DNA from: Octopus sinensis
Taxonomy: Eukaryota
Assembly: GCF_006345805.1 (NCBI RefSeq)
Contig: NC_043016.1
Span: forward strand, 22,506,001 to 22,570,000
Direction: 5' to 3'
DNA length: 64,000 nucleotides
Part shown: positions 6,336-62,339 of the stretch, in pieces
How the letters are laid out: the number at the start of each line of letters is the position of its first letter
Position numbering within the stretch: the stretch's first letter is position 1
The notes under the pieces: model-generated
Told to the model about the DNA's origin: nothing
Database searches by the model: none
What the model saw: the letters and a program-made list of their open reading frames with translations, nothing else
Made by a program: the position numbers and the translations under genes

Positions 6336-6740
6336 ATGAAAGGAATGAATTAATAAATTCATGTAATTTATTCTTTTATTCTTTTATTTGACTGCGGCTA
6401 TGCTGGAGCACCATCTTTTAGTCAAGCAGATTGACTCCAATACTTATTCTTTGTAAGCCTAGTATTTATTCTATCGGCATCTTTTTGCTGAACCTCTAAG
6501 TTACGGAGATGTAACCACACCAGCATTGGATGTCAAGTGATGTTGGTGGGGTGGACAAACACAGACACACAAACACGCACACACACACACATATATACGA
6601 CGAGCTTCTTTCCATCTATCAAATCCACTCACAAGGCTTTGGTCAGCTTGAAGGCTTGAAGCTATAGTAGAAAACACTTGCCCAAGGTGCCACGTAGTTG
6701 GACTGAACCCAGGAACCATGTGGCTGGTAAGCAAGCTTCT

Positions 6741-7711: not shown

Positions 7712-7723
7712 AAGCAAGCTTCT

Positions 7724-9461
7724 TTATTTCATTCAATTTGCCACAAGGGCATCACACAGATAGAAGCTTGCGGACATTAATGGGATGAATGATACGAGTT
7801 TTCCGGCCAACCAGGCTCCTTGCTACACTGAAGCATCTACCTGGTTCCAGGCCGGGCCACACAGACACAAATCTATAGGAGTTCTCTGGGAAGGATTTCA
7901 TGATCCTGCACAGATCACTATCCCATAGGACCTCCGCAGCTACCTGCAAAGGCCACTCAGGGTCCTCCGTGCAGGACAGAAGCCCCTCCCACCGGTCCCT
8001 CCTTTCCATTTTCTTAATTTCATTTTGTACAGTTCCTCCTTTGTGGAAGAGGACCACAAATTCATCCTCCAGCGGCACACCCGCCGGAGGAGAATTGGGA
8101 CACGCTGGCAGCGTGTCACAACCCACCGGCAATGTCCCGTTTTTCTTCTTTCTTTTCTTTTTCCCTTGGGCCGCGGGAGGGTGGGGTTCCTGTGATGCGT
8201 GCAGCAGGTCCTCCTTTTCTCCTGCAGCCCTCAGGTCCTTCGGTGGGCAACCATTGTTGCCCACCTCTTTTGTTTTTTCGAGGAGGTGGAAACCTCCTCA
8301 TCATCCTCCTCCTTCTCTCCCTCCATTGAGGGAGCAGGGAGAGATTCCACTATTAACTGCTCCAGGATCCTATTTTGGTCCTTGGGGCAGTTTTTCTTAA
8401 TGTGACTGCTCTCCAGACACAGATGACACTTGGTGGGGGAGTCCCTTAAGCATCACTGGGTACCTAGACCCGACCATCCTCAAAAAATCTGGAAAGACCA
8501 GACTTTCAGCTGTTTGGGTCCATAGGGTCAAAACAGCTTTTGACCCCTCCCAATCAGCCGCAGACAAAATTTTCACATTAAGCAGCTTGGTACTGCTACT
8601 ACCCAGACCCCAGTGGATAGAATCCTCTATCCACTCAGGCTCAATTCCGGGTGGCAAACCGCAGACCCAAGCCTTCAATAACTTCTTTCCACAATAGCTG
8701 GGAAGGAACATGATTTCCTTGCCCTCAGGGGGCCGGCTTGCAAAATCGCAAGCTTCTTGGGGGAGTCAAATAGTAACCAGACCGTTGCATACTTGACTCC
8801 CTGTGAAATGAATTTAATGGCTGGCATGTACTCTGCCAGCTCCTTCAAAATTGTGGCCTTCGGGAAGACAGTTATGGTGTCGAGTGACTTAGAATAAGTC
8901 CTCAACACCACCGTCTTCCTTTCGAGCTCTTTCATCCATTTTTTGGGAGGTGTTAAATCCCACACAAGTAATTCCTTTGCCATTTAAAAATGTTCAAATA
9001 CAGTTCAAAGTGTAAAATAAAGAAAGACACAAAAAAAGAAGGAAAGACACAACAGAAGGGAAGAAATAAAATATAACAGTTCAAATAAAGTTCTTTTTTT
9101 TAAAATAAATGATAGTGTGGAAAGAGAGTTCAAATCCTGGCAAAGAAATTAATTTTTGACCGAAAAGGTACTTCTGGCCTATCCTTGTAATCCACATGGG
9201 CACAAACATTTTCAAAAATAATTTCTCACAATTATGTGAGAAAATACATATCTCCACCGCAAGGCAGACAAAAAGCTCCGAATCCATAAGGACTTCTTGC
9301 TAGTACAAAAAAATAAACCTACAAGCAACAAATCCTACTGGACTCAAGGAGCAAAAAGTCTTACCTTACAGTAGAGCGTCTTTCAGTTTTCGCCAGCTGC
9401 ACACCAGCGTGACGACTTCAATTCAACAGGCGAGTGAAGAACAACTAACAACCAGAACCGG
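7724..9461 (-). mobile_element. Family A copy A2, ORF1-only Tx1-like element
   Basis: Frameshifted ORF MAKELLVWDLTPP.. (8983) through ..DPEWPLQVAAE.. (7752); TSD at 7712-7723 and 9462-9473; no EN or RT. Confidence 0.9.
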
Positions 9462-11288
9462 AAGCAAGCTTCTTACCACACAGGCACTCCTGAGCCTGTT
9501 GAATATTTTTCAATAAATTCTGTAAGGGAGTTCACCTTTAGTTTAAAGATACTAAGCTGATCGATAAAGGAACGCGACCATCGTTCTACAATACAATTTC
9601 TTGACATTTTGAAAATGTCTAGAAAGAAATTACAAAAATTAAATAGGGTTGAAACTGCCCCTAGGGGCGAATTCCTCCCTTGGAAAAGCACTCAAACGAA
9701 AGTTGGGTGCCTTACACAACTTATTTACAAAAATGTACACAAAAATTGGGCTATAAATAGTCAAAATAAACGATTACCTTCGGAGTCGAAGTGACAGCAC
9801 TTCCATAGACAGAGAGATAGATAGATGAATGAGTGAGTATAATTTTGTAAATAATAAAAACGAAATTAATAAGGTACTTCACCTTCAATGTTGACTTGAA
9901 ACGTCTTCCTGAAAAGGAAAGTGATTTGACTCTAAGTATTTAGAAGATGATAACTTTTTTATCGTGTGTTCATAAATAGAACAAAGGAATACTTTGGTTA
10001 TTTCCAGTTTAAACATCACATATTTGTTTATAGATTTGTGAGTGTGTGTGTATGTGCGTGTGTTACAGAGAGACAGAGTGAGAGAGAGGCAAACAGACTG
10101 AGAGTGGGAGACAAAAAGAGACACAAGATAGAAAGAGATTGAAAGTGTGTGTGTGTATCTTTGAATGACAACATTAATGTTCCGTCCCCACTTCATATTT
10201 GTCGCTTACACAACTCTGTCCTCTTCCCTGATCACCACGCAAACCTCAATGGCCCTCTTACACTTTTGTAGGCAAGCTAGATATATATTGTCAGGACATG
10301 CAGTAAGACTAGACTATAACATTCTGTTGTCAGTCACTGCATGTATGACATATTTGGCAAATGAAAGACGGAAAATGGAATATACAAGAATTTATTAATC
10401 ATGACAATTGTTTCAACACATCTAGCATTGATCCCTCTTGGGTGGGACATTCAACGAGTGGTTCAGGAGCATCCGGTGGGGCAGATGTATCTTATCGGAT
10501 GATAAATAGATACAACTCATTAAAATACCAGTTCCACAATGTAACTTCTCATTTTATAGAAAGACTAGCTTAATGTGACCCGCTTTATGCACGGGTGATG
10601 TTTTGGTTGTTGGACCAATGTATTAATGTAACATTGTTTTATTGTTTTAAAATGAAAGAGGCAATGCGTTTAGTGCTAAAAAAAAAAAAAAAAGACAAAC
10701 GTCCGCCAATGGGAAGACAGTTCATATTCGTTTAGAGCACTCTGGGTATAATCATAAAATTGAAAAATGGAATTTCAGTGGCGAATATTGTTGAGGACTC
10801 TAAAAAAAAAATGTTTTTTAACCTGCAGGAAGATAGTTTAAACCAAAAAAGGCAGACTGTAAACTCACATCTGCAATAATGTTTGAAATTAGAATTCACA
10901 CCCAGCTCAGTTTTGTAGAAAGAGTATCGCGATGTGGATGCATGAGTTGTGAGTTTGACTCACAGAGGTTATATGGTGACACATGCCAGTCCTTTCGACA
11001 CCACCTAAACAATGGAACAGTGTATAAAATGTAATTAACAACTCATTCACTTTATGAATGTCTTATGTTGGCGAAGAAACAATAACTTGACAAAACCGTT
11101 CAATGGAGACGTAGAAGGAATTGGAAAATGAGGAATAAAGAGACGAATGAGTTGGATCAAATGTTTGCAAAAATCTTAAACCAATCTTCTTTATGAACCA
11201 TGTTCTTTTTAATGTCTTTATTTTCAAGAATGAAGAGGTAATCAAGACGTGCAGAAGAAAAACTCAAGCAAAATCTCATGACTTACAA

Positions 11289-14589: not shown

Positions 14590-16935
14590 CAGGTGAAATG
14601 CAAAGGGAACATCTGCACCAGATAGAATGAGGGGGATTCTGGGGATGAAAATGTCCTCTCCTTTGCCACAGCCAGACAAAATTGTGACTTCATGAACGTA
14701 CTGCATAGCCTTCTTTATTTTATTAAATTTGCCACAAGGGCAGTGCACAAAGAAGTTTGCGAGCTGGACACAGACATTAATGGAATGAATGATAATGATA
14801 CAAGGATGATGAGAATGGGAGAAGATGTAAAGCGCCCGCCGACTTTCGTTTCTCTAAAACATTGTTCTTTTTTAGAATCACAAAATGAGGCAATAAACCT
14901 CTTTCACAGTTCAGTAGGTACAGGAGCACACATGAGGCAATAATCCTCTTACTTTATATATTCAACAAAATATTTTGAGGTAATACACTTCTTACACAAT
15001 TGTCCCACATTTCAATTTTTCTGTCCGGCCAGGCTCCTTGCTTCATTGAAGCATCTAGTCGGTTCCAAGCCTTGGCCATATATCTAAAAGAGTCCGCTGG
15101 GAAGGAATTCGTTATCCTGCACAGATCGTTATCCCATATGACCTCCGCAGCCACCTGCGAAGGACACTCAGGGTCCTCTATGCGGGACAGAAGCCCCACC
15201 GGCCCTTCCTTTCAATTTTACTAATAGCATTTTGCAATGTCCCTCCCTTATGGAAGAGGACAACAAATTCCTCCTCCAGTGGCTCATCCGCTGAAGAAGC
15301 ATCGGGATATGCTGGCAGCATGTCACAAACTGCTGGCAATCTCCCGTTTTTCTTTTTTCTTTTTCCCTTGGGCCGTGGGAGGGTGCCTCTATTAACTGCT
15401 CCAGGACCCTATTTTGGTCATTGGGGCAGTTTTTCTTGATGTGGCTGGTTTCTAGGCACAGGTGACATTTGGGGGAGCATCCCTCGAGCATCACCAGATA
15501 CCTAGACCCGGCCATCCTCAAAAAATCTGGGAAAGCCAGACTTTCGGCTGATTGGGTCCATAGGGTCAAACTGCATAGCCTTCTTAATAACCAAGTGTGT
15601 CCCATTGCAAAGCTTTGGAAGGTCTAAATTCCTCAGCAGCATGACAGGAGCTCCGACTTTTACTTCCAGTGTATGAGGAGGCAGGCCATGTGGGTCAAGG
15701 GAATTAAGAAACTCCACTGGATAGTTCACTGCCTGGTCATTGTCGGGTACAGAATTGATTGACCCATACACGTGCAGCCTTCTCGGAAGCAAAAGCAGCA
15801 GCTTAGCATTGAGAGTGGCCACTGTGTTGTTTTTTGGAGCCAAAATGGCTCTTTCGGAAATCCAATTCATGTCAAGGTAGTTCCTTTGTAGATTTGGGAA
15901 GACATGTGCCTCTAGTTCATTGGAATTACTGATAATACATCAGAGGTGAGTTAGTGACAGTTTTCTGTTTTCATTGAGAGGAACAACACCGTTTCCGATT
16001 GACAATATATCATATGCAAAATCTGATGCCATCTGGTCACCGTGAAGCTGTGCTCTCATGTTTGTTTTGAGAGATAATGTTGTAACATTTTGCTACAGGG
16101 GCGAGGACTTTAGGCAGGCCCTGATTACATCTTCCCTGGTTCCTTTGGGAAATTGCCAGACAGGAGAAGAGTTATAGCACCCATCATAGCGGGACAGTCT
16201 CTGATGTCTTCAAGAGTGGTGTTGAGAGCTTCAAGGGATCGCTTGTGGGCCATTGTGCATTCATTCCAAACTATCAGCTGGTAACTCCGGAGAAGCAAGC
16301 CGTTTTCACACATTTTGGTGATGTTACAGGAGGGCACTTTGGACCGTGCCAAATCAAATAGTAGCTTAAAGGTTGAGTGCACTGTCCTACCACCGGGCAG
16401 TAAAGTTGCTGCAATGCCAGAGGAGGCCACAGCTACGGCTACGTCTTTTCGGTGCCTTACTTTTACAAGGAGAAGCTAAATAACAAACGTTTTTCCAGTC
16501 CCTCCAGGTGCATCAAGAAAAAATACCCCCTTTTCGTTTCTGCATGTGGTCAAAGATGGTACTGTAAGCTCACTATTGCTCAGGCAGAAGTTTGGGCCCA
16601 TTTTGCTGGATGTATTGATTAAGGGCTTCAGTGTCATAAGACGTTTCACATATTAACTCTGTTGGTATTGAAGGTGTCCCATGGTGCAATGATTGTGGCA
16701 GCCCATATGTAGGTAAGGTATTACCTCCCACAGAAACAGTCTTGTTCTCTATGTTAAGGAAAGCACAGTTGTAAATGAATTCATTTTCAGCAGACAAGCA
16801 GGTATGATGCAGTTGGGCCTGGTAATAGAAGTCTTCTGATAGGTCATGTCTGTACTTTAACCACAATGAATGTGGGACACTCAACAACTGGTTCAGGAGT
16901 ATCCAGTGGTACAGACATATCTCGTCGGGTGATAA
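14590..16935 (-). mobile_element. Degenerate Helitron PIF1 helicase region, interrupted by family-A copy A6
   Basis: LWLKYRHDLSED; FLDAPGGTGKT (~16510); ASSGIAATLLPGGRTVHS; LLRNLDLPKLCNGT..KAMQ continues as YVHEVTILSGCGKGEDIFIPRIPL beyond the insertion. Confidence 0.9.
14715..15570 (-). mobile_element. Family A copy A6, 5'-truncated
   Basis: 14-bp TSD CTGCATAGCCTTCT at 14701-14714 and 15571-15584; runs from mid-ORF1 (TLWTQSAESL..KCHLCLETSHIKKNC) to the A-rich 3' end. Confidence 0.9.
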
Positions 16936-20330: not shown

Positions 20331-20368
20331 AAGTACTTTTATTATCATTTTTTATTATTTATTATCTT

Positions 20369-20485
20369 AGACCTGCTGAGTAACTATATTTTCAAATAGA
20401 GTAAATTTTAGTTCGATTTGATTTTAAATCGAATTGATTTTATTATTATCTATTTGAAAATATTGCCATGAAACGCACATAGTCT
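20369..20485 (+). ncRNA. Degenerate type I hammerhead-like fold upstream of the PLE
   Basis: agac CTGCTGA..14-bp perfect stem atattttcaaatag/ctatttgaaaatat..GAAA CGCAC ATA gtct; two core substitutions. Confidence 0.5.
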
Positions 20486-27118: not shown

Positions 27119-27625
27119 AAAGAATAGCCCGTGAGGGAAAATTATTTATATATATCAATATTATATATATATATTTATATATATCAATATTGTATATATA
27201 TATATATATTTATATATATTAATATTATATATACATATATACTCTTTTACTCTTTTACTTGTTTCAGTCATTTGACTGCGGCCATGCTGGAGCACCGCCT
27301 TTAGTCGAGCAAATCGACCCCGGAACTTATTCTTTGTAAGCCCAGTACTTATTCTATCTGTCTCTTTTGCCGAACCGCTAAGTGACGGGGACGTAAACAC
27401 ACCAGCATCGGTTGTCAAGCAATGCTAGGGGGACAAACCCAGACACACAAACACACACACGCATATACATATATATACATATATATGACAGGCTTCTTTC
27501 AGTTTCCGTCTACCAAATCCACTCACAAGGCATTGGTCGGCCCGGGGCTATAGCAGAAGACACTTGCCCAAGATGCCACGCAGTGGGACTGAACCCGGAA
27601 CCATTTGGTTGGTTAGCAAGCTACT

Positions 27626-29784
27626 TAATTTTATTTAATTTGCCACAAGGGCAGTACACAGAGAGTAGCTTCGCGGGCTGGATATAGACATTAATGAATG
27701 ATGGTGATGGAATGAAGATGGTGATGGGAGAAAACGAAAGTGCCCGCTGACCCCCGCTTCTCTAAGACAATGTTCATTTTTTCAATAAGTTCAAAAATGT
27801 TCTTTTTTTCAATAAGTTCAAAAATGTTCTTTTTTTCAAAAATTTCACAAAAATTTCAAACTTTTACAAATTTCACATGAGGCACTTAACCTCTTTCTTT
27901 CATTTAATTTGCCACAAGGGCGGCACATAAATTCACAACAATTCTCCCTGTCAGGTCCCCGAAGCAAAGTGACTTGCCGCCTGCAGACAACTCTGCGATG
28001 ACAAGTCGAGGCCTGCAAAGAGAAAAGTAAATTCTTTCCTGTCAAAGGTCGCTGCGACCCTTGACAACATGTTTTCTGTTACTACCTCCGCAGCCACCTG
28101 CTGAGGCCATAACGGACTACTTGAGCCGACCTTGGCCATACGTTCTCGGTCACCCAAGCCATTCAAAAATTTTTCCACCTTCCCTCCCTTGTGGTAAAGG
28201 AGGATAAACAACTCCTCTTCACAGGAAGGGACCTCACACTGATCCGTCAGTGGCACACTTCCCACTGACGGAGCCCTGTCTGCGGGTGGCACACGTCCCA
28301 CCCGCGCTCCGTTGGCGACCCAGAAACATCAGCCGTCTGACCTCTTTTTCTCTTTTTCCTCTTTTTTAGAGGATGCTAGCCTGGGGGGCTCCGTCGGCAG
28401 ACGCGGGGGGTCGCTATCCTCCTCCTCCGTCTGTGCGTTCTTTGGTGAGCAACCATTGTTGCTCACCTGTCTTTTTCTTTTCGTGGAGGCAACTTCCTCC
28501 ACCACTTCAACCGTCTCCCCCTCCACTGAGGGGGCGTCAGGCACCTTTTCCTTTTCATGCTCCGGGGCACCACCACGGCCCCCAGGACAGTTCCTCTTGA
28601 TATGTCCAGGCTCCAGGCACAGGTGACACTTGGGGGGGCGTCCCTCAAGCATCACCAGATACTTGGACCCGGCCATCCTCAAGAAATCCAGAAAAACCAG
28701 ACTTTTGGCTGATTGGGTCCACAGGATCAACACCGCTTTCGCCCCCTCCCAATCAGCCGCAGGCAGTACTTTTACATTCAGAAGCTTGGAACTGCTACCG
28801 TCCAGACCCCGGCGGATAGAATCCTCTATCCACTCGGGTTCAACGCCGGGTGGTAAGCCGCAGATCCAGGCTCTCAATAATTTTTCCCCCTTGTAATTTG
28901 GGAGAAACAATATTTGTTTGCCCTCAATGGGCTGGCTTGCAAAATCGCAAGCTTCTTTTGGGGAGTCAAATAGCAACCAAACCGTTGCGTATTTCACTCC
29001 CCATGCGATAAATTTAACGGCTGGCATGTAATCCGCCAGCTCGTTCAGTATGGTAGCCTTTGGGAAGACTGCTGTGGTGTCGAGCGACTTCAAATAAGTC
29101 CTCAAAACCACGGTCTTCTCCTCCAGCTCTTTTAAATACTTATTGGGAGGTGTCAATTCCCACACAGTAAATTCCTTTGCCATGTTAACATAAAGTTCAA
29201 TAACAGTTCAAAATGTAATAACATAAAGTAAGACACCAAAAGGAGAATGAAAACACAACAGAAGAGAAGAAACAAAATTAGAAATAGCAGTTCAAAAACG
29301 TTCTTTTTTTAAAAATAAATGATAGCTCGAAGAAGAGAGTTCAAATCCAGACAAAGGAATTAATTTTTTTTTCTTTTTTCTTTTTTCTCTTTTTTCGGCC
29401 AAAAAAAAGGTACTCCAGGCCAAATGTCCAGCTGGTAAAACAACTTGCAAAAAGAATCCTTGGTACTCCGTGGTAAATCCAGTGGAAAACACAAAGACAA
29501 TTTCAAAACACATTAATTTTTGCAGAGGGATTACGCCTCTTCAAAAACACAATTCTCACTGCAAAGTGAGTCTTTACACTCGACCACAGACAGGAAAAAT
29601 TTCCGGAGCAAAGTGAAGTCTATTACTTGCTAAAAATTATTAAATGCAAAGCAATAAACTTCACTAAGCCCCTAAATAAAATTCAACAAATGCCTACCTG
29701 TAGTCGAGTTTCAAAAATTCAACATTTCATGTCGAAAGACGTGACAGCTGGCAGCTGCCAAAAAACATGTCCGAACACGTCGAT
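27626..29784 (-). mobile_element. Family A copy A3 (2.16 kb, ORF1-only)
   Basis: TSD GGTTAGCAAGCTACT at 27611-27625 and 29785-29799; ORF 28329-29183 with C-terminal domain at 27951-28301. Confidence 0.92.
28329..29183 (-). CDS. Tx1-like ORF1 protein with CCHC zinc knuckle (A3, N-terminal part)
   Basis: 284 aa; KCHLCLEPGHIKRNC (CX2CX4HX4C); LPNYKG motif; Lys-rich tail. Confidence 0.85.
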   Translation of the reverse strand: MAKEFTVWELTPPNKYLKELEEKTVVLRTYLKSLDTTAVFPKATILNELADYMPAVKFIAWGVKYATVWLLFDSPKEACDFASQPIEGKQILFLPNYKGEKLLRAWICGLPPGVEPEWIEDSIRRGLDGSSSKLLNVKVLPAADWEGAKAVLILWTQSAKSLVFLDFLRMAGSKYLVMLEGRPPKCHLCLEPGHIKRNCPGGRGGAPEHEKEKVPDAPSVEGETVEVVEEVASTKRKRQVSNNGCSPKNAQTEEEDSDPPRLPTEPPRLASSKKEEKEKKRSDG

Positions 29785-29799
29785 GGTTAGCAAGCTACT

Positions 29800-31840
29800 T
29801 TATTTCATAAAATTTGCCACTAGGGCAGTATACAGAGTAGTTGCGGGCTGGACAAAAAACATTAATGAATGATGGTGATGGATGAAGATGGTGATGGGAG
29901 AAGACGAAAGCGCCCGCCGACTTTCGCTTCTCTAAGACATTGTTCAAAATTTGACAAAAAAATTCAATAAATTATTACAAATTTTAAAAGAGGCAATAAA
30001 CCTCTTTTTCAGTATAATAAAAAATGTTCAATGGGCCTATGTAACCCGGCCGACCATCGCTCTTGCCTCACCGAGGCAATAATCGCTGGTCAGGCAGTGG
30101 TCCAAAGGTATAATTTGGAATGAGTGCATCGGGAAGGAACCCACGATCCTGCCTAGATTACCCCTCCCTATGACCTCCGCAGCCAGCTGCGAAGGCCACT
30201 CGGTGTCCTCCGTGCAGGACCGAAGTCCCTCCTAATGGCCTCTCTTTTTCATTTTACGCACTGTATCTTCCACCGCTCCTCCTTTGAAAAAGAGGAGGAC
30301 AAATTTTTCCACAAATTGTCCCTCAGGCGGCACACCTGCGTGAGAAGACCCAGGAGATGCCATCTGCGTATCACAATCCGCCGGCGGCGTTCCGTTTCTC
30401 TTTTTTTTTCTTCTTTTTGCCTTGGGCCACGGGAGGTTGAGGTTCCGGAGTTGCACACACCGGGTTCTCTTCTCCCGCAGTTTCCAGGTCTTTTGGTGGG
30501 TTGCCATTGATCCCCACCTTTCTTTTTCTTTTGGAGGAAGTCTTTGCTTCCTCATTCTGTTTCTCTCCCTCCATTGGGGGGGGGGGCAGGGAGAGGCTCC
30601 GATATCAACTGCTCCAGGATCCTACTCTGGTCCCTGGGGCAGTTCTTCTTAATGTGGCCGGTCTCCAGACACAGGTGACACTTGGGGGGGCGTCCCTCAA
30701 GCAACACCGGATACCTGTACCCGGCGATCCTCAGAAAGTCCGGCAAGACCAGACTTTTGGCTGATTGGGTCCATAGGGTCAATGTGGCTTTTGACCCCTC
30801 CCAATCAGCCGCAGGCTGTTTTTTCACATTTAGGAGCTTGGCGCTGCTACCACCCAGACCCCGGCGGATAGAGTCCTCTATCCACTCGGGTTCAATGCCA
30901 GGTGGTAGGTCGCAGATCCACGCTCTCAGAAATTTTTCACCCTTGTAGTTAGGGAGAAACAAAATCTCCTTGCCCTCAATGGGCTTGCTTGCAAATTCGC
31001 AAGCTGCTTTAGGGGAGTCAAACAGCAACCAAACCGTTGCGTATTTTACTCCCCGTGCAATGTATTTAACGGCTGGCATATAGTCTGCCAGCTCGTTAAT
31101 GATAGTTGCCTTCGGAAAAACAGCGATGGTGTTGAGCGACTTTGAATAAGTCCTCAACACCACAGTCTTGTCCTCTAGCTGCTTCAAGTATTTTTTGGGA
31201 GGTTCTAGGTCCCACACAATAAGTTCCTTTGCCATTTTGTAACGGAATTCAATAAAAGTTCAACAGGTGTAAAAATAAATGCAATAGAAAGAGTGAGAAG
31301 AGAAAACACAACAGAAGAGAAGAATTACAATAAAAATGACAGTTCAAAAAGAGTTCTTTTTAAATAAAAGATAGCTGGAAGGAAGAGAGTTCAAATTTGG
31401 CAAAGGAATTAATTTTTTGGCCGAAAAGGTACTCCTGGCCAAGCGTCGAAACAATCCTTGGTTACTCTTGGTGCTTCTTGGTATATCCCAAAAAACAGTC
31501 CTTGAATATCCTTGGTGCTTCTTGGTAAATCCAATTTGAATTAATTTTTGAGGAGGGGCTACGCCTCCTCAAAAAACACAATTCTCATTGCAAAGTGAGT
31601 CTTTATACCCGCAACAGGCAGGAAAAAATACCTGGAGCAAAGTGAAGTCTATTACCTGCTAAAAAATTTTAATGCTAAATAACATTAAATGCTAAAAACA
31701 TTAAAAGCAAGCAATAAACCTCACTAAGCTCCTAAAAATATAAAACGCCTACCTGTCGTCGAGTCAAAAAGTTCAACAAAAGTTCAATAATTCACGTAGC
31801 AACACGTGACATTTGGAGCAGCCAAAAAAACACGTCTGTC
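29800..31840 (-). mobile_element. Family A copy A4 (2.04 kb, ORF1-only)
   Basis: ORF 30552-31235 (KCHLCLETGHIKKNC); right junction TGGTAAGAAGCTACT at 31841-31855. Confidence 0.92.
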
Positions 31841-31855
31841 TGGTAAGAAGCTACT

Positions 31856-34528
31856 TTATTTTATTTAATTTGCCACAAGGGCAGTACACAGATAGTAGCT
31901 ACAGGCTGGACATAGACATTAATGAATGATGGTGATGGAATGAAGATGGTGATGGGAGAAGACGAAAGCGCCTGCCGACTTCCGCTTCTCTAAGACATTG
32001 TTCTTTTTTCAATAATTTCACAAAATTTCCAAAATTTCACAAAAATTCCAAAATTTCACAAAAATTCCAAATTTTACAAATTACAAATTCAAAAATGTTT
32101 CCAGAGGCAATAAACCTCTATCTCAATATAATACAAAAACAAGTTCACGTTACTCGGCCGATGAACGCTCTTGCTTTATTGACGCAATCGTTCCTCGTCA
32201 GGCCCCCGCATACAGGTATAAATTGAAAGGACTCCTCCGGGAGAGAATTCTCGATCCTGCACCGATCGTTATGGAATAGGAACTCTGCAGCCAGCTGCGA
32301 AGGCCACTCGGGATCCTCCATGCAGGACCGAAGTCCCTCCCATTGGCTTCTCTTCCTCATTTTACATGTTTCATTTTCTAATATTCCTCCTTTGTAGAAG
32401 AGGATTACATAATATTTCTCCGGATACACAAGTGCCGGAGGAGACATGAGTCACGCCGTCTGCGTGTTACAATCCGCTGGCGGTGTTCCGTTTCTCTTCT
32501 TTCTTTTTTTCTTTTTACCGTGGGCCATGGGAGGTTGAGGTTCCGGTGTTGCACACGCTGGGTCCACTCTTTCTCCCGTAGCTTCCGGGTCTTTTAGTGG
32601 GTCACCATTGTTCCCCACTTTTCATTTTCTCGTTGAGGAAGTCACCGCTTCCTCGTACTGTTTCTCTCCCTCCATTTGGGGGGCAGGGAGAGGTTCCGAT
32701 ATCAACTTCTCCAGGATCCTACTTTGGTCCCTGGGGCAGTTCTTCTTAATGTGGCCGGTCTCCAGGCACAGGTGACACTTGGGGGGGCGTCCCTCAAGCA
32801 TCACCGGATACTTGGACCCGGCCATCCTCAAAAAGTCCGGAAAAACCAGACTTTTGGCTGACTGGGTCCATAGGGTCAAAACAGCTTTTGACCCCTCCCA
32901 ATCAGCCGCAGGCTGTACTTTTACGTTCAGTAGCTTGGAACTGCTACCATCCAAGCCCCGGCGGATAGAGTCCTCTATCCACTCGGGCTCAACGCCTGGT
33001 GGTAAGCCGCAGATCCAAGCTCTCAACAATTTTTCTCCCTTGTAATTTGGGAGAAACAATATTTGTTTGCCCTCAATGGGCTGGCTTGCAAATTCGCAAG
33101 CTGCTTTAGGGGAGTCAAATAGCAACGAAACCGTTGCGTATTTAACTCTTCGTGCAATAAATTTAACGGCTGGCATGTAGTCTGCCAGCTCGTTTAAAAT
33201 AGTAGCCTTTGGGAAGACTGCTATGGTGTCGAGCGACTTCGAGTATGTCCTCAGCACCACGGATTTTTCATCTAGCTTATTCAAATATTTTTTGGGAGGT
33301 GTCAATTCCCACACAGTGAATTTCTTTGCCATAACGTAAGGTTTAAAAACCGTTCAAAATGTAATAAAGTGACACTTGGGGGGGGGGCGTCCCTCAAGCA
33401 TCACCGGATACTTGGACCCGGCCATCCTCAAAAAGTCCGGAAAAACCAGACTTTTGGCTGACTGGGTCCATAGGGTCAAAAGCTGTTTTGACCCCTCCCA
33501 ATCAGCTGCAGGCTGTACTTTTACGTTCAGTAGCTTGGAACTGCTACCATCCAAGCCCCGGCGGATAGAGTCCTCTATCCACTCGGGCTCAACGCCTGGT
33601 GGTAAGCCGCAGATCCAAGCTCTCAACAATTTTTCTCCCTTGTAATTTGGGAGAAACAATATTTGTTTGCCCTCAATGGGCTGGCTTGCAAATTCGCAAG
33701 CTGCTTTAGGGGAGTCAAATAGCAACGAAACCGTTGCGTATTTAACTCTTCGTGCAATAAATTTAACGGCTGGCATGTAGTCTGCCAGCTCGTTTAAAAT
33801 AGTAGCCTTTGGGAAGACTGCTATGGTGTCGAGCGACTTCGAGTATGTCCTCAGCACCACGGTTTTTTCATCTAGCTCATTCAAATATTTTTTGGGAGGT
33901 GTCAATTTCCACACAGTGAATTTCTTTGCCATAACGTAAGGTTTAAAAACTGTTCAAATGTAATAAAGTAAATAAGACACAAAAAGGAGAATGAAAAACA
34001 CAACAGAAGGGAAGAAACAAAATTAGAAATAGCAGTTCAAAAAAAGTTCTTTTTCTTTTAAAAATAAATGATAGACGGAGGAAAAGAGTTCAAATCCAGA
34101 CAAAGGAATGAATTTTTTCTGTTTTTTTCTTTTCACATTTTTCGGCCAAAAAATGGTATTCCAGGCCAAATGTTCAACTGGTAAAACTTCTTGATAAAAT
34201 AATCCTTGGTACTCCTTGGTAATTCCCGTGGATAACACAAAGACAATTTCAAAAAACAATTTTTGCAGACGGACTACGCCGCTTCAAAAATACAATTCTC
34301 ACTGCAAAGTGAGTCTTTACACTCGACAACAGGCAGAAAAATTATATCTGGAGCAAAGTGGAGTTTATTATCTGCTAAAAAATATTAAATGCTAAAAAAC
34401 ATTAAATGCAAGCAATAAACTTCACTAAGCTCCCAAAACTACAAAACGCTTACCTGTAGTCGAGTCAAAAGTTCAACAATTCACGTTGAAACACGTGACA
34501 ACTGGCAGCTGCCAAAAAACACGTCAGA
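31856..34528 (-). mobile_element. Family A copy A5, with a ~600-bp internal tandem duplication
   Basis: ORFs 32622-33332 and 33354-33932 are near-identical; C-terminal domain at 32145-32447; TSD at 34529-34543. Confidence 0.92.
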
Positions 34529-34550
34529 GGTTAGCAAGCTACTTACCACA

Positions 34551-34706
34551 CAGCCACTCCTGCGCCTACAGCCACTCCTGCGCCTACAGCCACTCCTGCG
34601 CCTACAGCCACTCCTGCGCCTACAGCCACTCCTGCACCTACAGCCACTCCTGCGCCTACAGCCACTCCTGCGCCTACAGCCACTCCTGCGCCTACAGCCA
34701 CTCCTG
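34551..34706. repeat. 18-bp tandem repeat (cagccactcctgcgccta) x9, last unit partial
   Basis: The unit is the first 18 nt of the SINE head read on the minus strand. Confidence 0.95.
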
Positions 34707-34729
34707 CTGTATATATTTATATATATATC

Positions 34730-45570: not shown

Positions 45571-45595
45571 TAATGATGATAATAATAATAATAAT

Positions 45596-46174
45596 TTATT
45601 CTTTTTATTGGCCACAAGGGCTGACACACATGATTAGAAACATAAAGGGACAGAACAGGACGAAAGGTTACAAAGGGTTTTGTCCGTTTTTGAAAAAATA
45701 ATCCGTGTAAACAACAGTGTAACAATGAAAATATTTAACAACGAAAAACTCCCAAAAGGGGGAGGTGTTACGAAAAGTTCCTGGTGGAAAAAACCCATTA
45801 AAGCCAACAGGAGCCTGGTCAAAAAAAGGCGCGCGTGCTTTCCGGTTCGGAAGGAGGATCTCTGTTGCCTTTTATGGCGCGAGGTGGGTGTTTTTTTGGA
45901 AGAGCTTGTGACAATGTGTGTGTTTGTGGAGGGTATGTTGTTGGAAGGAAGGAACAGCCGACTGTTCGCTTCATAGCCATTTTTGTTTAAATGTGTTTGT
46001 TATTTTCACAATGTTCAAAAGTTTAAAATTTTGCCTAGCCAACTAGCTTCGTACGAAGTTAGTTGGTTTGGCCACAAAAATATCCAAAAATATTAACACT
46101 TTTAAAGAAATTACCAATCAAATTGGCACAAAACTTACGCAGCTTTTGGAGACACGTCCATCCGCTTTGAAAGA
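45596..46174 (-). mobile_element. Tx1 family B mini-copy B0 (5' UTR and ORF1 start fused to the 3' UTR)
   Basis: Junction ggtcaaaaaaagg|cgcgcgtgctttccgg at ~45828; (AAT)n on both sides. Confidence 0.85.
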
Positions 46175-46189
46175 AATAATAATAATAAT

Positions 46190-49100
46190 TAATTCTTTTT
46201 ATTGGCCAGAATGATTAGGAACATAAAGGGACAAAACAGGATGAAAGGTTACAAAGGGTTTTGTCCGTTTTTGAAAAAAATCCGTGTAAACAACTGTATA
46301 ACAATAATTATATAACAACATAAAACACCCAAAAAGGGGAGGCGTTACGAAAGGTTCCTGGTGGAAAAAACCCCACAAAAGCCAATGGGAGCCTGGTCAA
46401 AAAAAGTGGGGGTAGAGAGCCCCTTTTTTCTCCTTTTATATTACCTTATTGAATCACAGGCGAAACCTGAGAACTGGTCCATTTATACAGGCCAGTCTCG
46501 CACAATTCACCCACCTTTCATAAAACTTGCTATCAGACAGCACTCTCCTCTCTAACCTCATCATCCTTTTCAAGTGAAACTTGAAAAAGTTGATGAGGCC
46601 TTGACCAAAGAGGAAAGTGTCTGACTTTAGTCCTTTCAAACGAGTCCACCATACAACTTCTTTTGCCACAGCCACTAGGCACAAGAAAACGGCCTTGCCC
46701 TCCTTGTTAAAGGAGGTCGGCGGGGCAATCTTCACTATGGATTCAGCCGATAGTCAGATCCGTCCTACACGTGACAGTAGCTGTTCGACATAAACCCATA
46801 TTTCAGCAATACTCGGGCACTGGACGAGTGTGTGCAGAACGGTTTCGTCGTCCTGGCAACACCTCGGGCAGGCCTGGCTGACGGCACTTCCGTGCCGGTA
46901 GAGTTTATCTCAAACAGGCAGAGCCCCTCGGTAGCACTGCCAGGCAAGCGACCTCTGGAAATTATCCATCGGCCCCGGCCTGAAAGTCCTCCCGAACAGA
47001 CCGCTCAATTCGTCATCTTCAACGCCTAGAGTTTCCCAAAGAACGTCGTCGCATTTTTCCTCCACTAACCCTCTATAGAACGCTAGAGTGGAGCTGTAAC
47101 CGATCGCATTGGCCGCCTGACGGAGGGCGGAGAGGGCTTGACGGCACTCGAGGTGCCAAGCGGTCTACGTTTGATCCAGGTCTGCAGCTCCGTCAAAGAG
47201 ACGAGCTGCGGAAAATCGCGTCTGACAAAAGACGACCACACCTGTTCACCGTCTAGGAAGCGCTTGAGATGCCGCAGCCTGAGCGCATGTCTGCGCAACA
47301 GCAACCACGGCATTCCAAGGCCTCCGTTCAGCAGTCATTGAGAGCAGATGGATCGCCTGACCAGTGGCACCTGACCCTTCCACAAAAAGTCGAAGAGCAG
47401 GCGTACCAGCTTGGCCAACCAGCGGTCGGGAAAAGGATGACGGTCAAGCGGTAATAGATGACGGATGCGATGTACGCATTCGCCACCTCCGCTCGACCTT
47501 TCACGGACAGCTTCCTCTCGGCCCATTTCTGGGTGAGACATGCCACCCTGCTCGTCACCTCTTCCCAGTTCTTATCCACCTGGAGGTCCGGACCGAACCA
47601 GACCCCGAGCAGTTTAACGGGTCCGTCTGTCCAGCGCCCTACGACGCTGTTGGACGGCATGGGCTTGCCTCTCCAGGTGCCCAGTTGCAAGCCCACAGAC
47701 TTTTCCGCGTTAATCTTTGCCCCTGTCACCGCTTCGTACTGGTTTAGCGTCTCGCCAATCAGGCCAATGTGCCTGTGGCTCGACACCACCACGGTGACGT
47801 CGTCGGCATAAGCAGACACGCTGTTTCTGCCTCCTAGATCACGCGGGATATCCCTCAAAGCCTCCAACTTGCGCAGTAATGGCTCGAGAGTCAAAATGTA
47901 CAAGAGGGAGGAGAGAGGGCATCCTTGGCGGACTGAACGCGAGATGTCGAACGGTTCCGAAAGGTGACCGTTCACCCGTATCACCGAGCAGATGTTGCTG
48001 TATAAAGCAGCTATCCACCCGCGGAAGCTGGACCGAAGCCGGCTGCCTTGAGGACAGCTGCCAGGTACCGATGGTCGACCCTATCGAAAGCTTTACTCTG
48101 ATCCAAGTTGATCAAAGCCCCACCCGCGCCAGCGTCGTTATCCACCCTCTCTATGATGTAGCGCATGAGATGGAGGTTGTCGTGTATCGACCTGGTCGGC
48201 ACGGCGCATGTCTGCGTCTTGCCGACCAGCTTGTCCATGGCAAGCGCCAATCTCTTGGCTAGCACCTTGGCCAAAATCTTCAACTCTGCATTGAGCAGAG
48301 TGATGGGCCGGAAATTCCCTATAACGGCCCCCTTGTTTGGGTCCTTCTTTAGCAAAGCCACCACCCTCGACAGACAAAAGCAGGAATTCTCCCGTTTTGC
48401 TGCCAGTTGCAGTAGACGTTTGCCAACAGGCCCGCAATCAAGCCTGCACCGTTGTCCGTTCCACCGCTCGTCCCAAACAGTTGAGCAAAGTGCCGCTGAA
48501 GCACCGTACACATCTGCTTCGGTTGGGTAACCTCGCGCCCGTTCTGGTCCACCAAAGACCGAATGGTTGCTCTGTTGCCTCGCTTCGCCTCCGCCACGCG
48601 GGCCCATCGAGCGGCTCTAGTCCCCTCCCCGCTTAGCGAACGTGCCTTAGCTCTGACAACGCAGCCTTCGTGTTTGGTGTTGAAGTGTTGGTCGAGGGCC
48701 AACACGTCGGTCGCTATGCCAGTGTCAAGAGCCTCGTCTAGTTTCTTAACTAAATCCCGCTCTCTCTTCCTACGTTCAATAGTTAGAGTCTTACTATACC
48801 TAATCGACTCTACTCTAAATGCTCTCTTGAGGGCGAACCACCAGTTGTTGTTGATGATTGCCCCCGTGACCGCCCGCTTAACTAGTAAACTAATCCGGTC
48901 TCTGTAAGCTTTGCACGCCGTTAACGACGCGTTCAGCTTCCAGTAGCCGGGTCCCTGTCTATGTAGCCTATCTAAGTCGACCGTACAGATCACTAATTTG
49001 TGGTCCGTATATTCGACTAGGTGGAATTGTGGACACCCTACGCTGTCCTTATCCGCTGGCCTACAAAACACTCTATCTAAGTACGATCTAGACGACCCGA

Positions 49101-50526
49101 TGCGGTTTGTCCAAGTCCACATTGGCACATTCGGGTTGTCTAGTCGAAACCTGTCGGACAGCTGAAAGCGGCCGAGTAGGTTGGCGAGGCTCTTGCACCC
49201 TCCCCTTCTCCTATCAGACGCTCCCCTGCCCACCCGATCAAAACGTTCGTCTAAGACAGCGTTCCAATCCCCAACTAGCACTAGAGTGCGTGACGTTCCC
49301 AGGAAAACTTCCAGACGTTTGAAATAATCCGACTGCCCTGCTCCTGTCGGAGCGTAGGCAGCCAGCAGTCTGAAAGCACCGCCGTCACTACCGTCGACGT
49401 CGAGGACCACCAACTTACCTTCCGGATCCAGGAAGACTGTCCTTATTTTCAGGTCCAGGCCCTTCTGAAACAACACCGCAGTACCACCACCGCCCGCTCC
49501 CGGCCGACACGGAGATAGAAATATCTCGTATCCGCCGAAAAGGGCTGCGAGTTCCTGCGGGTGGGAGAGCCTGGTTTCACTGATGGCTGCTACATCCACA
49601 TCATGAAACCTCAGGTCGTTTAACAGGTGACCCTGTTTCCAAGGTGACCCGAGGCCTCTCACATTCAAGCAACCGATTCTAAGATTTGCCATGTTTCAAA
49701 AGTTAGGGAAAAAATAGGAGAAAAAAGGCTCTACTTACTGTTGTTGGTGGTGGGGGTGGCTCCCTTGTGCATTTGCACGGGTTCTTCAACAATATTTTTA
49801 TAAAGTTTCTGAGAGAAACTTTTCCCTAGCGATCCCACATCGTTAGGGAATATTTGCTTGATTTCATCATATGTTTTTGCATTTATTTTTATTGTGAGAA
49901 TGTGTGCTGGTGGTATGTTTTGTGTTGGTATGATGAAATCGGTTATATTTGTACTAGTTTTGTTTTTTAAGTACTCCACTAGTTTTTGGTTCTTTGTGTT
50001 TATTGATGTAATTGTGTCTGTGTGTGTTTGTGTGTGTGGCAGTGGCAGTAGTGGTGTCGAAAGTGTTGTTGTTGTTGTTGTTGTGAGTGTGTGTTGTTGT
50101 TGATGTTGTTGTTGATGTTGGGAAGTACTATTTGTTCGTGCTTCCCCTGTAAATCTTTTTGTTTTTTCCTCCTTTTCTTCTTTGGAGGCACTATACTCCA
50201 TTCTCCTTTGGTGGAATCAGAGCTCGCACAATCTGAGATCTCTTCATCCGGCAAAGGAATGGTTGAGGGGTCTGCTTCAGCAGCAGGACGAAAGGTTGTT
50301 GGTTCCGCCGGTATCGGTGGTGCCGCTGCTCCTGTTGCTGTTGATGTTGCTGCAGTTGATCTTCGAGGTACTGGTGTCGGTGTTCGCCCAACTGACGAGC
50401 TCCGCAAGAAGCCGGTCGGTTTGGCTACAAAAATATTTTTAAAAATTCAAACTTATTAACAAATTTCCAATAAAATTGGCACAAAACTCACAGAGCTGAT
50501 TCACGTACGTCCGTCGTGTCGGAAGG
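46190..50526 (-). mobile_element. Tx1 family B copy B1 (ORF1 N-half deleted, ORF2 degraded)
   Basis: EN ORF 48349-49692 (MANLRIGCLNVRGL, ISETR, GDWN); RT fragments; 5' UTR joined to mid-ORF1 at ~50385. Confidence 0.9.
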
Positions 50527-50550
50527 AATAATAATAATAATAATAATAAT

Positions 50551-56372: not shown

Positions 56373-56390
56373 AATAATAATAATAATAAT

Positions 56391-62265: not shown

Positions 62266-62339
62266 AATAATAATAATAATGATAATAATAATAATAATAA
62301 TAATAATAATAGTCGTCGTCGTCGGCGGCGGCGGGGGGG

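What the first reader, a model, noticed from the sequence alone, without database searches (positions are those of the whole stretch)
27611..34543. ORF1-only Tx1-like retroelements stacked at one nucleotide inside a SINE's tRNA-derived head
Seen: three ~2.1-kb elements lie head-to-tail, separated by GGTTAGCAAGCTACT (27611, 29785, a variant at 31841, and 34529). Removing them rejoins one SINE as ..TGGCTGTGTGGTA^AGTAGCTTGC.., between its A-box and B-box. Each element has a ~600-bp 5' UTR, one ~400-aa ORF with a CX2CX4HX4C knuckle, a 3' UTR and an A-rich end, with no endonuclease or RT. The three copies differ from each other, so they look like successive insertions rather than one duplicated unit. 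Known: the Tx1 clade includes sequence-specific families targeting multicopy RNA genes and microsatellites, and ORF1-only HAL1 elements exist in the L1 clade. Inference: this is a non-autonomous half-Tx1 family that parasitises both an autonomous partner and a SINE used as a multicopy safe target, and each insertion splits the SINE's Pol III promoter. I do not recall this combination being described.
Basis: partly seen in the sequence, partly recalled or inferred. Interest (0 to 1): 0.92.

Follow-up and report, generated by a model that had tools for sequence, protein, structure and literature searches.

The report
ORF1-only retroelements stacked in octopus SINE
A family of about 2-kb retroelements in an octopus genome keeps only the RNA-binding gene of a LINE and inserts again and again at one nucleotide of a common SINE, which combines several known transposon behaviours in a new way and may use RNA pairing to find its target.

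Summary
Three minus-strand elements (27626-29784, 29800-31840, 31856-34528) lie head to tail, separated by AGTAGCTTGCTAACC. Removing them restores an octopus SINE without gaps.

The same window holds more copies. A second, independent SINE copy carries two elements at the same nucleotide (6741-9460). A 5'-truncated copy with a 15-bp target-site duplication sits in a Pif1-helicase ORF (14716-15570). Two Octopus sinensis loci show the same SINE-head/element junction.

The ORF (two RRM-like regions, a CCHC knuckle, and a C-terminal domain with no known relatives) is homologous to ORF1 of an APE+RT LINE of the L1/Tx1 group in this window. No copy has an endonuclease or RT.

Array members differ at dS 0.4-0.6 with dN/dS 0.10-0.18, whereas an in-place duplicate gives dS 0.012 and dN/dS about 1.3. 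They are therefore separate insertions from selected lineages, not one duplicated unit.

New here: a 3'-UTR motif GCAAGCTWCT is the reverse complement of the target AGWAGCTTGC and covaries with it.

Not shown: Tx1 clade membership, and the autonomous partner. All ORFs in the window are broken.

Precedents exist: Tx1 families that target transposons, tandem insertions around a TSD, HAL1, and HeT-A. I rate it a new variant of a known kind.

The parts
27240..27610 (-). Host SINE copy 1: the part downstream of the insertion site (AACCAAATGG..., B-box-like GGTTCAGTCC, body and tail)
   Evidence: aligns collinearly to intact O. sinensis SINE copies.
27611..27625 (-). Target-site copy S3 (AGTAGCTTGCTAACC on the minus strand), at the 3' junction of E1
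27626..29784 (-). Element E1: 5' UTR 29184-29784; ORF 28329-29183 (284 aa); divergent C-terminal region about 27954-28301; 3' UTR with an internal relic 3' end at about 27885-27921
27664..27674 (-). E1 3'-UTR motif GCGAAGCTACT, the reverse complement (with a 1-nt bulge) of the target AGTAGCTTGC
27641..27653 (-). Small conserved 3' hairpin TGCC-CTTGT-GGCA, shared with the (ATT)n LINE as GCCCTTGTGGC
   Evidence: 95.8% of cells paired.
29785..29799 (-). Target-site copy S2 between E2 and E1, identical to the local SINE sequence
29800..31839 (-). Element E2: ORF N-terminal part 30552-31235 (227 aa); C-terminal domain in two other frames, 30040-30517
31840..31855 (-). Variant separator S1 (AGTAGCTTCTTACCAG). 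It differs from the local SINE (GCTAACC) and resembles other SINE copies (CTTACC).
31856..34528 (-). Element E3: ORF 33332 to 32148 (about 395 codons with two in-frame stops); internal 600-bp duplication 32770-33369 / 33370-33969
34529..34543 (-). Target-site copy S0, next to the SINE head
34544..34707 (-). Host SINE copy 1 head (..GGCTGTGTGGTA, A-box-like). Its first 18 nt are tandemly repeated 8.8 times (34550-34707).
6386..6740 (-). Host SINE copy 2 (about 78% identical to copy 1): downstream part, including the target copy AGAAGCTTGCTTACC (6726-6740)
6741..7710 (-). Element EB (internally deleted: 5' UTR joined to the C-terminal part of the ORF, then the 3' UTR). 3'-UTR motif CAAGCTTCT.
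7711..7723 (-). Separator AGAAGCTTGCTTC between EA and EB
7724..9460 (-). Element EA (second subfamily): ORF from 8983 with frameshifts; C-terminal domain 7752-8264; 3'-UTR motif GCAAGCTTCT, a 10/10 reverse complement of the target AGAAGCTTGC
9461..9497 (-). Target copy AGAAGCTTGCTTC plus the head of SINE copy 2 (GGCTCAGGAGTGCCTGTGTGGTA)
14701..15585 (-). 5'-truncated copy Etr (14716-15570), flanked by the 15-bp TSD AAGAAGGCTATGCAG (14701-14715 and 15571-15585), inside a Pif1-type helicase ORF
45580..64000 (-). Related autonomous LINE (ORF1 with RRM-like regions and CCHC; ORF2 with APE, RT and zf-RVT) in a tandem array with units separated by (ATT)n. Its ORF1 is homologous to the ORF of the elements, and its 3' end shares GCCCTTGTGGC.

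Best explanation
These are copies of a protein-coding but non-autonomous non-LTR retroelement family of octopods.

Structure: a 5' UTR of about 600 nt, then one ORF of about 395 aa, then a 3' UTR of about 300 nt ending in a small hairpin (TGCC-CTTGT-GGCA) and AAATAAAATAA. The ORF has two RRM-like regions, one CCHC knuckle, a basic linker, and a C-terminal domain of about 100 aa found only in this family. The ORF is a LINE ORF1 of the RRM+CCHC type found in L1/Tx1-group LINEs.

Mechanism (inferred from the hallmarks): the family has no endonuclease or RT, so it must be copied by target-primed reverse transcription using the ORF2 protein of a site-specific partner that has not been identified. 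The bottom strand is nicked at TA^AGWAGC. This site lies 2 nt after the A-box of an abundant octopus SINE, always in the SINE's orientation, and gives 12-15 bp TSDs. Each insertion regenerates ..TAA|AGWAGCTTGC.. at its junctions, so further insertions stack head to tail with one target copy between units.

Shown: the three array members are separate insertions from diverged lineages whose ORF was under purifying selection.

Proposed, not shown: the 3'-UTR motif GCAAGCTWCT pairs with the target sequence AGWAGCTTGC. The target sequence could be carried on a read-through transcript, where the nicked DNA end (identical to the motif) would displace the motif and prime precisely at the element's last base. 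Alternatively the motif could pair with the target's top strand.
For: - Anatomy and junctions.
- Empty-site reconstruction: gap-free against intact SINEs.
- Same insertion nucleotide in four independent SINE copies: two in the window, plus O. sinensis L001 and L003.
- TPRT hallmarks: 12-15 bp TSDs and a 5'-truncated copy whose rejoined flanks restore one continuous Pif1 ORF. There are no LTRs or TIRs.
- ORF1 homology: BLASTP 2e-12 and 3e-6, collinear, to ORF1 of an APE+RT+zf-RVT LINE in the window. That LINE's RT is closest to human L1 ORF2p (3e-29, against R2 at 1e-14). An exhaustive HMMER search found 75 distant relatives; the eight looked up include three octopus proteins, and five of ten scanned match CCHC models.
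- No RT or EN in any of seven copies from two species.
- Independent insertions and a functional ORF: dN/dS 0.10-0.18 at dS 0.39-0.62 between E1, E2 and E3, and 0.13-0.17 against the O. sinensis copy. The in-place duplicate gives dS 0.012 and dN/dS 1.28. Identity along the elements is mosaic: E1-E3 are 92% identical in the N-terminal ORF and about 45% in the 3' half. Three separators are 15/15 identical.
- Motif-target complementarity: 10/10 in EA, 9/9 in EB, 8/8 in E1 and 7/7 in E3. The A/T position switches together with the target's T/A.
- Precedent for tandem insertions sandwiching a TSD in Tx1-mobilised elements: PMC4494074.
Against: - No partner with ORF2 and this 3' end or this target was found. 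The only related LINE in the window targets (ATT)n and shares only about 17 nt of the 3' end.
- Every ORF in the window is interrupted, so current activity is unproven.
- One of eight insertions is outside a SINE, at a site sharing only TAAGAAG. Recognition may therefore be of a short motif rather than of the SINE.
- The pairing statistics are modest: six sequences in two lineages; 35/500 and 31/500 shuffles reach the observed values; only one position covaries. A similar 9-mer, CAAGCTWCT, also occurs inside the ORF.
- Three hits in one SINE among what should be very many empty SINE copies is not explained by simple re-targeting.
Confidence: 0.75

Rival explanations
1. One element inserted once, and the array then grew by local tandem duplication or unequal crossing-over between the flanking target copies. 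The differences between copies would be decay after duplication.
For: Head-to-tail units with short identical separators are what unequal exchange produces. E3 does contain a true in-place 600-bp duplication.
Against: Between E1, E2 and E3, dS is 0.39-0.62 with dN/dS 0.10-0.18, so the divergence built up under selection. The real in-place duplicate has dS 0.012 and dN/dS 1.28. E1 is 92% identical to E3 in one segment and about 45% in another. Three separators are still 15/15 identical.
Confidence: 0.04
2. The family is not SINE-specific. The partner endonuclease prefers a short motif (TAAGWAG), and the SINE is simply the most abundant carrier of that motif in octopus genomes.
For: The truncated copy sits at TTA|AGAAGG in a Pif1 ORF and shares only the core with the SINE site. 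An unoccupied TAAGAAGCTT exists at about 3356.
Against: Seven of eight insertions are in the SINE. Both copies of this SINE family in the window are occupied, several times over, while three copies in 42 kb of O. sinensis are empty. The 3'-UTR motif matches 10 nt of the SINE target, not just the core.
Confidence: 0.25
3. Multi-unit arrays are made, at least in part, in a single event. Either a read-through multimer RNA copied from another array is reverse-transcribed whole, or the RT jumps from the 5' end of one RNA (which carries a target copy) to the target-like 3' end of another RNA.
For: The E3/E2 separator AGTAGCTTCTTACCAG differs from the local SINE (GCTAACC) at 2-3 of 15 positions, while the other three separators show 0/45 changes. 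It resembles other SINE copies (CTTACC). E1 carries an internal relic 3' end (GCCCTTGTGGCAAATTAAATGAAAG), as expected from a switch onto another RNA's 3' end. This model would also explain why arrays are far more common than chance re-hitting allows.
Against: The E2/E1 separator and both outer copies are identical to the private local variant (GCTAACC), which indicates at least two local TPRT events. Mutation of one separator cannot be excluded.
Confidence: 0.25
4. The copies are independent deletion derivatives of a normal ORF1+ORF2 LINE and lost ORF2 after insertion.
For: Internally deleted LINE copies are common. EB is such a deleted copy of this family.
Against: E1, E2, E3, EA and two O. 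sinensis copies, spanning dS up to about 1.3, share the same ORF, C-terminal domain and 3' UTR layout with no RT or EN remnant. The C-terminal domain has no match in the related LINE's ORF1 or ORF2.
Confidence: 0.03

Closest known systems
Target-specific Tx1-clade LINEs and their non-autonomous riders (Tx1L in Tx1D; Keno; Kibi/Koshi; crocodilian Tx1-Mar with SINEU-3) - Kojima 2015, PMC4494074
   Same: Insertion at one site of a multicopy sequence, including other transposons. A defined TSD. Tandem insertions sandwiching a TSD, interpreted as sequential insertions. Non-autonomous elements sharing the partner's target. A related APE+RT LINE in this window is microsatellite-specific and arrayed like Kibi/Koshi.
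   Different: Here the target is a tRNA-derived SINE, hit just after its A-box. The rider is not a SINE but a 2.1-kb element that keeps a selected ORF1 and adds a novel C-terminal domain. Tx1 clade membership is not shown.
HAL1 (half-L1) of mammals (own knowledge: Smit 1999; Bao and Jurka 2010)
   Same: A LINE derivative that retains ORF1, lacks ORF2 and propagates as a family through a partner's ORF2p.
   Different: HAL1 belongs to the mammalian L1 clade, with a coiled-coil type ORF1p. It inserts without site specificity and ends in poly(A). The octopus ORF1 is the RRM+CCHC type, and the element is site-specific.
HeT-A of Drosophila telomeres (own knowledge)
   Same: Encodes only a Gag/ORF1-like protein with CCHC knuckles and no RT. 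It is target-restricted, forms head-to-tail arrays and depends on RT supplied in trans.
   Different: HeT-A is in the Jockey clade. It adds to chromosome ends without an endonuclease nick or TSD and has a host function.
R1/R2-type use of downstream target sequence on read-through RNA (own knowledge: Luan and Eickbush 1996; Anzai et al. 2005)
   Same: Target sequence carried at the RNA 3' end anneals to the nicked target and fixes the start of reverse transcription. The variant separator and the motif/target pairing fit this idea.
   Different: Those elements are autonomous and rDNA-specific. I know of no description of an internal 3'-UTR copy of the primer sequence that could mask the read-through target.

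Membership tests
Non-LTR (TPRT-mobilised) retroelement | Target-site duplications of variable short length flanking the insertion | tested here: met
   12-15 bp copies of AGWAGCTTGCT(W)ACC at every junction, and the 15-bp AAGAAGGCTATGCAG around the truncated copy.
Non-LTR (TPRT-mobilised) retroelement | 5'-truncated copies with an intact 3' end | tested here: met
   Etr 14716-15570 keeps only the 3'-terminal 855 bp. Its rejoined flanks give one continuous Pif1 ORF.
Non-LTR (TPRT-mobilised) retroelement | No LTRs or terminal inverted repeats; A-rich 3' end | tested here: met
   One search found no terminal repeats. The end is AAATAAAATAA, which is A-rich but not poly(A).
Tx1 clade (L1 group) | RT sequence groups with Tx1 in an RT phylogeny | not testable with these tools
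   The element has no RT and no Tx1 reference sequences were available. The related LINE's RT is nearest to human L1 ORF2p among solved structures and has a C-terminal zf-RVT. L1-Tx1 is the only L1-group superfamily listed among recently active LINEs in O. vulgaris (PMC13282606).
Tx1 clade (L1 group) | ORF1 related to the ORF1 of clade members | tested here: inconclusive
   The ORF is homologous to ORF1 of an L1/Tx1-group LINE in the window and to ORF1-like CCHC proteins, several of them from octopus, at 21-31% identity. None of these is a verified Tx1 reference.
Tx1 clade (L1 group) | Sequence-specific insertion | tested here: met
   The same nucleotide is hit in four independent SINE copies from two species. 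There is one off-target site that shares TAAGAAG.
HAL1-like ORF1-only non-autonomous LINE derivative | Conserved ORF1, no ORF2, propagating as a family | tested here: met
   Seven copies from at least three subfamilies and two species share the layout. dN/dS is 0.10-0.18.
HAL1-like ORF1-only non-autonomous LINE derivative | Derived from mammalian L1, sharing its 3' end and poly(A) | tested here: not met
   The host is an octopod, the ORF1 is the RRM+CCHC type, and there is no poly(A). It works like HAL1 but is not a member.
tRNA-derived SINE (the host element) | Internal Pol III A and B boxes in a tRNA-like head | tested here: inconclusive
   TGGCTGTGTGG (A-box-like) and GGTTCAGTCC (B-box-like) are visible. 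ARAGORN and Rfam give no tRNA call. A tRNA origin of octopus SINEs is published (Ohshima and Okada 1994, cited in PMC4824008).

The most novel reading that the evidence does not exclude
Target choice in this LINE lineage is set, at least in part, by RNA. A 10-nt 3'-UTR motif (GCAAGCTWCT), placed just upstream of a conserved terminal hairpin, base-pairs with the target (AGWAGCTTGC) and covaries with it. Under this reading, changing the motif would retarget the element, and one ORF2 protein could serve riders with different targets. The (ATT)n LINE has TAATCAT at the equivalent position. That would make it an RNA-programmed, site-specific LINE system with an ORF1-only rider.
Probability: 0.12. 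Interest if true: 0.9.

Novelty: new variant of a known kind. Interest (0 to 1): 0.6.

Why it matters
The family shows that an ORF1-only LINE derivative, kept under purifying selection, can exist outside mammals and Drosophila and can be site-specific. This bears on what ORF1 proteins contribute when ORF2p is supplied in trans.

A SINE serves as the landing pad, and every insertion separates the SINE's A and B boxes. This is a clear case of one non-autonomous retroelement disabling another.

The covarying complementarity between the 3' UTR and the target gives a concrete, testable handle on how site-specific LINEs position the primer, and possibly on whether RNA contributes to target choice.

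Practically, such arrays will confuse repeat annotation in cephalopod genomes. At least two gene models in O. sinensis (LOC115225585 and the model behind P0140) contain sequence of this family.

Tried and rejected
- tRNA and Rfam scans of the window and of an intact SINE gave no tRNA call.
- Word-indexed protein searches gave one close relative for the N-terminal part and none for the C-terminal domain.
- The RT search returned 775 hits but no informative names for assigning a clade.
- Partner hunt: P0125 looked promising but is the O. sinensis copy of the (ATT)n LINE. No ORF2-bearing element with this 3' end is present in the window or in L001-L003.
- The two metagenome scans (3'-end pattern, then ORF profile) found nothing.
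- The window's ORF is not on record in the assembly index.
- The AlphaFold model of the N-terminal part was poor (pLDDT 43). The C-terminal model (pLDDT 63.5, beta-alpha-alpha-beta-alpha-beta) gave no significant PDB match.
- Rejected: local tandem duplication; independent loss of ORF2; an LTR or TIR element.
- Rejected: the (ATT)n LINE as the direct partner. Its target differs, and only about 17 nt of the 3' end are shared.
- Rejected: a forward-copy reading of the UTR motif (6/10 matches, against 10/10 as a reverse complement).
- Rejected: a resemblance between CTCTGTGT in the UTR and the SINE head. The LINE, which has a different target, carries the same TGTGT.

Full report
**1. Observation**

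The 15-mer GGTTAGCAAGCTACT occurs exactly at 27611, 29785 and 34529. A variant lies at 31840-31855. The repeated units are on the minus strand:

| Element | Coordinates | Length |
|---|---|---|
| E1 | 27626-29784 | 2159 bp |
| E2 | 29800-31840 | 2041 bp |
| E3 | 31856-34528 | 2673 bp |

E3 is longer because a 600-bp stretch (32770-33369) is duplicated in place at 33370-33969.

Read on the minus strand, the flanks are ..AGGCGCAGGAGTGGCTGTGTGGTA | AGTAGCTTGCTAACC | AACCAAATGGTTCCGGGTTCAGTCCC... Joined with one copy of the 15-mer, they align without a gap to three uninterrupted SINE copies from Octopus sinensis, at up to 92% identity. The insertion point is 2 nt after the A-box-like TGGCTGTGTGG and upstream of the B-box-like GGTTCAGTCC. 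ARAGORN and Rfam do not recognise the head as a tRNA. The tRNA origin of octopus SINEs is taken from the literature (Ohshima and Okada 1994, cited in PMC4824008).

**2. Anatomy of an element**

- The 5' UTR is 596-605 nt (479 nt in the second subfamily).
- The ORF starts MAKEFTVWELTPP.. and carries the knuckle CHLCLEPGHIKRNC (Pfam zf-CCHC, below the curated cut-off).
- After a basic linker (KKKRKKKNG) comes a conserved stretch of about 100 aa: EFVVLFHKGG..WEGL.SC.EDPEWPSQVAAEV..RI..SFP..SF.
- The 3' UTR is about 290 nt. It ends in the small hairpin TGCC-CTTGT-GGCA and then AAATTTAATAAAATAA.
- No copy has an intact full ORF. The open stretches are 284, 227 and 236 aa. E3 reads through about 395 codons only across two in-frame stops. 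E2 and EA have frameshifts.
- No copy contains an endonuclease or RT. There are no LTRs or TIRs.

**3.

A second copy of the same SINE (about 78% identical, with unrelated flanks) carries two more elements at the same nucleotide:

head GGCTCAGGAGTGCCTGTGTGGTA | AGAAGCTTGCTTC | EA (7724-9460) | AGAAGCTTGCTTC | EB (6741-7710, internally deleted) | AGAAGCTTGCTTACC AGCCACATGG..

These two are the only copies of this SINE family in the window, and both are occupied.

A third site holds an 855-bp, 5'-truncated copy (14716-15570). It is flanked by the 15-bp duplication AAGAAGGCTATGCAG. Removing it restores one continuous ORF with a Pif1 2B domain. That target (TTA|AGAAGG) shares only TAAGAAG with the SINE site.

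In O. sinensis, the only close protein relative (LOC115225585, 62% identity) lies directly after a SINE head: GGCTGTGTGGTA AGTAGCTTGCTTCC | 5' UTR. A second locus shows GCCGTGTGGTA AGAAGTTTGCTTCC | 5' UTR.

In total, four independent SINE copies in two species are hit at the same nucleotide and in the SINE's orientation. There is one off-target insertion.

**4. What the ORF is**

It is homologous, and collinear, to the two halves of ORF1 of an APE+RT LINE that lies in the same window at 45.6-64 kb (BLASTP 2e-12 and 3e-6). That LINE has Exo_endo_phos, RVT_1 and a C-terminal zf-RVT. Among solved structures its RT is closest to human L1 ORF2p (3e-29) and far from R2 (1e-14). The LINE is itself site-specific: its units are arrayed with (ATT)n between them, and the O. 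sinensis copy is flanked by (ATT)n on both sides.

An exhaustive HMMER search with the ORF profile found 75 distant relatives at 21-31% identity. The eight looked up include three octopus proteins, and five of ten scanned match CCHC models.

The element's ORF is therefore an ORF1 of the RRM+CCHC type, and its nearest identifiable relative is ORF1 of an L1/Tx1-group LINE. Tx1 clade membership proper cannot be tested, because the element has no RT and no Tx1 references were at hand. L1-Tx1 is the only L1-group superfamily listed among recently active LINEs in O. vulgaris (PMC13282606).

The C-terminal domain has no homologue in 5.8 billion proteins, no Pfam match and no match in the LINE. Its model (pLDDT 63.5, beta-alpha-alpha-beta-alpha-beta) has no significant PDB neighbour. 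Its dN/dS is 0.4-0.7, so it is coding but under weaker constraint.

**5. Successive insertions, not a duplicated unit**

| Comparison (first 200 codons) | dS | dN/dS |
|---|---|---|
| E1, E2, E3 pairwise | 0.39-0.62 | 0.10-0.18 |
| Each against the O. sinensis copy | 1.1-1.3 | 0.13-0.17 |
| The in-place duplicate inside E3 | 0.012 | 1.28 |

The differences between array members therefore built up while their lineages were under selection for the protein, before they arrived at this site.

Identity along the elements is mosaic. E1 and E3 are 92% identical in the N-terminal ORF but about 45% in the 3' half, where E2 and E3 are 67-92% identical. Three of the four separators are still identical, 15 of 15.

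The same data show that the ORF1-only layout is old and is the family's normal form. It is not a set of independent deletions.

**6. Mechanism**

Shown:
- 12-15 bp TSDs
- 5' truncation
- a fixed 3' end
- variable 5' ends
- no enzymes encoded by the element

Inferred: the elements are copied by target-primed reverse transcription, using a partner's ORF2p that nicks the bottom strand at TA^AGWAGC. After insertion, both junctions keep most of the site: head plus TSD on the 5' side, and ..ATAA plus TSD plus SINE on the 3' side. The site can therefore be hit again. Kojima reads tandem SINEU-3 copies sandwiching a TSD in crocodilians in the same way (PMC4494074).

Simple re-targeting does not explain why one SINE is hit three times when empty copies are common (three in 42 kb of O. 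sinensis).

The E3/E2 separator (AGTAGCTTCTTACCAG) differs from the local, private variant (GCTAACC) and looks like other SINE copies. E1 carries an internal relic 3' end. Both observations fit RNAs that carry target sequence and an RT that switches templates, or the copying of multimer read-through RNAs. I treat this as a partial rival explanation.

**7. A new feature: a 3'-UTR motif complementary to the target**

About 38 nt before the 3' end, every copy has a motif that is the reverse complement of the first 10 nt of the target.

| Copy | UTR motif | Target |
|---|---|---|
| EA | GCAAGCTTCT | AGAAGCTTGC (10/10) |
| EB | CAAGCTTCT | AGAAGCTTG (9/9) |
| E1 | GCgAAGCTACT | AGTAGCTTGC (10 pairs with a 1-nt bulge) |
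| E3 | AGCTACT | AGTAGCT (7/7) |
| E2, Etr | degenerate | (5 or more pairs) |

The one position that differs between subfamilies (A or T) changes together with the target (T or A), over three independent target sites.

On the alignment, 76.8% of helix cells pair, against 20-56% when the partner is slid. One pair shows AU:2 and UA:2. Only 35/500 and 31/500 shuffles reach the observed values. With six sequences in two lineages this is suggestive, not proof. A similar 9-mer also occurs inside the ORF.

The motif has the same sequence as the 3' end of the nicked bottom strand (..GCAAGCTWCT-3'). On a read-through RNA it would pair with the downstream target copy, and the DNA primer could displace it to start cDNA synthesis exactly at the element's last base. 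Alternatively, it could pair with the target's top strand. The (ATT)n LINE has TAATCAT at the equivalent place, but in AT-rich sequence that carries no weight.

**8. Comparison with known systems and novelty**

The behaviour matches target-specific Tx1-type LINEs and their riders. The coding content matches HAL1 (ORF1 only). The combination of ORF1 only, restricted target and head-to-tail arrays resembles HeT-A.

None of these fits as a family:
- HAL1 is mammalian L1.
- HeT-A is in the Jockey clade and telomeric.
- Tx1 membership is untestable here.

I found no description of an ORF1-only element of this group, of a LINE-type element aimed at a SINE's promoter region, or of the UTR/target complementarity. 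Repbase and Dfam could not be consulted.

Verdict: a real feature and a new variant of a known kind. It is of moderate to good interest, and of higher interest if the RNA-target pairing proves functional.

Noticed in passing
window 45580-64000 (minus strand); L002 7720-13370: At least three full-length (~5.9 kb) copies of an L1/Tx1-group LINE (ORF1 with RRM-like regions and CCHC; ORF2 with APE, RT and zf-RVT) lie in a tandem array separated by (ATT)n. The O. sinensis copy is flanked by (ATT)n on both sides. This is an (ATT)n-microsatellite-specific LINE, analogous to Kibi/Koshi.
   Followed up: partly
window 34550-34707: The first 18 nt of the SINE head (AGGCGCAGGAGTGGCTGT on the minus strand) are tandemly repeated 8.8 times, directly upstream of the insertion site. 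The origin is unknown; slippage or aborted or template-switched reverse transcription are possibilities.
   Followed up: no
window 27885-27921 (minus strand), inside the E1 3' UTR: E1 contains an internal second copy of the 3'-terminal signature (GCCCTTGTGGCAAATTAAATGAAAG), followed by about 270 nt of E3-like 3' UTR. The E1 lineage looks like a chimera made by a template switch onto the 3' end of another subfamily's RNA.
   Followed up: partly
About 90-100 nt from each element's 5' end (e.g. window ~29690, ~31750, ~34450, ~9365; L001 ~5580; L003 ~13840): A splice-donor-like AG|GTRAG (ACAGGTAGGC / TAAGGTAAGA) is conserved in all subfamilies and both species, while the surrounding 5' UTR diverges. 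It could mark a 5'-UTR intron or a regulatory element.
   Followed up: no
window 31212-31243 and 31389-31420 (E2); the equivalent positions in E1, E3 and EA: The 5'-UTR sequence AATTCCTTTGCC is complementary to the start-codon region ATGGCAAAGGAATT about 170 nt downstream, and this is conserved between subfamilies. It could form a translation-control hairpin.
   Followed up: no
window 14300-15900 and 11289-11879 (minus strand); also 31-675: Pif1-type helicase ORF fragments, which look Helitron-like. One of them is the landing site of the truncated element.
   Followed up: partly
window 18650-25560, 36458-37198, 38180-39910: Other transposon remnants are present: APE/RT LINE fragments of other families and a mariner-like transposase ORF. 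The whole window is a dense nest of transposable elements.
   Followed up: no
L001 6001-6846; L003 8001-34638: At least two O. sinensis gene models contain sequence of this family. LOC115225585 (P0001) is the element's ORF itself, and the multi-exon model behind P0140 includes a fragment of it.
   Followed up: partly
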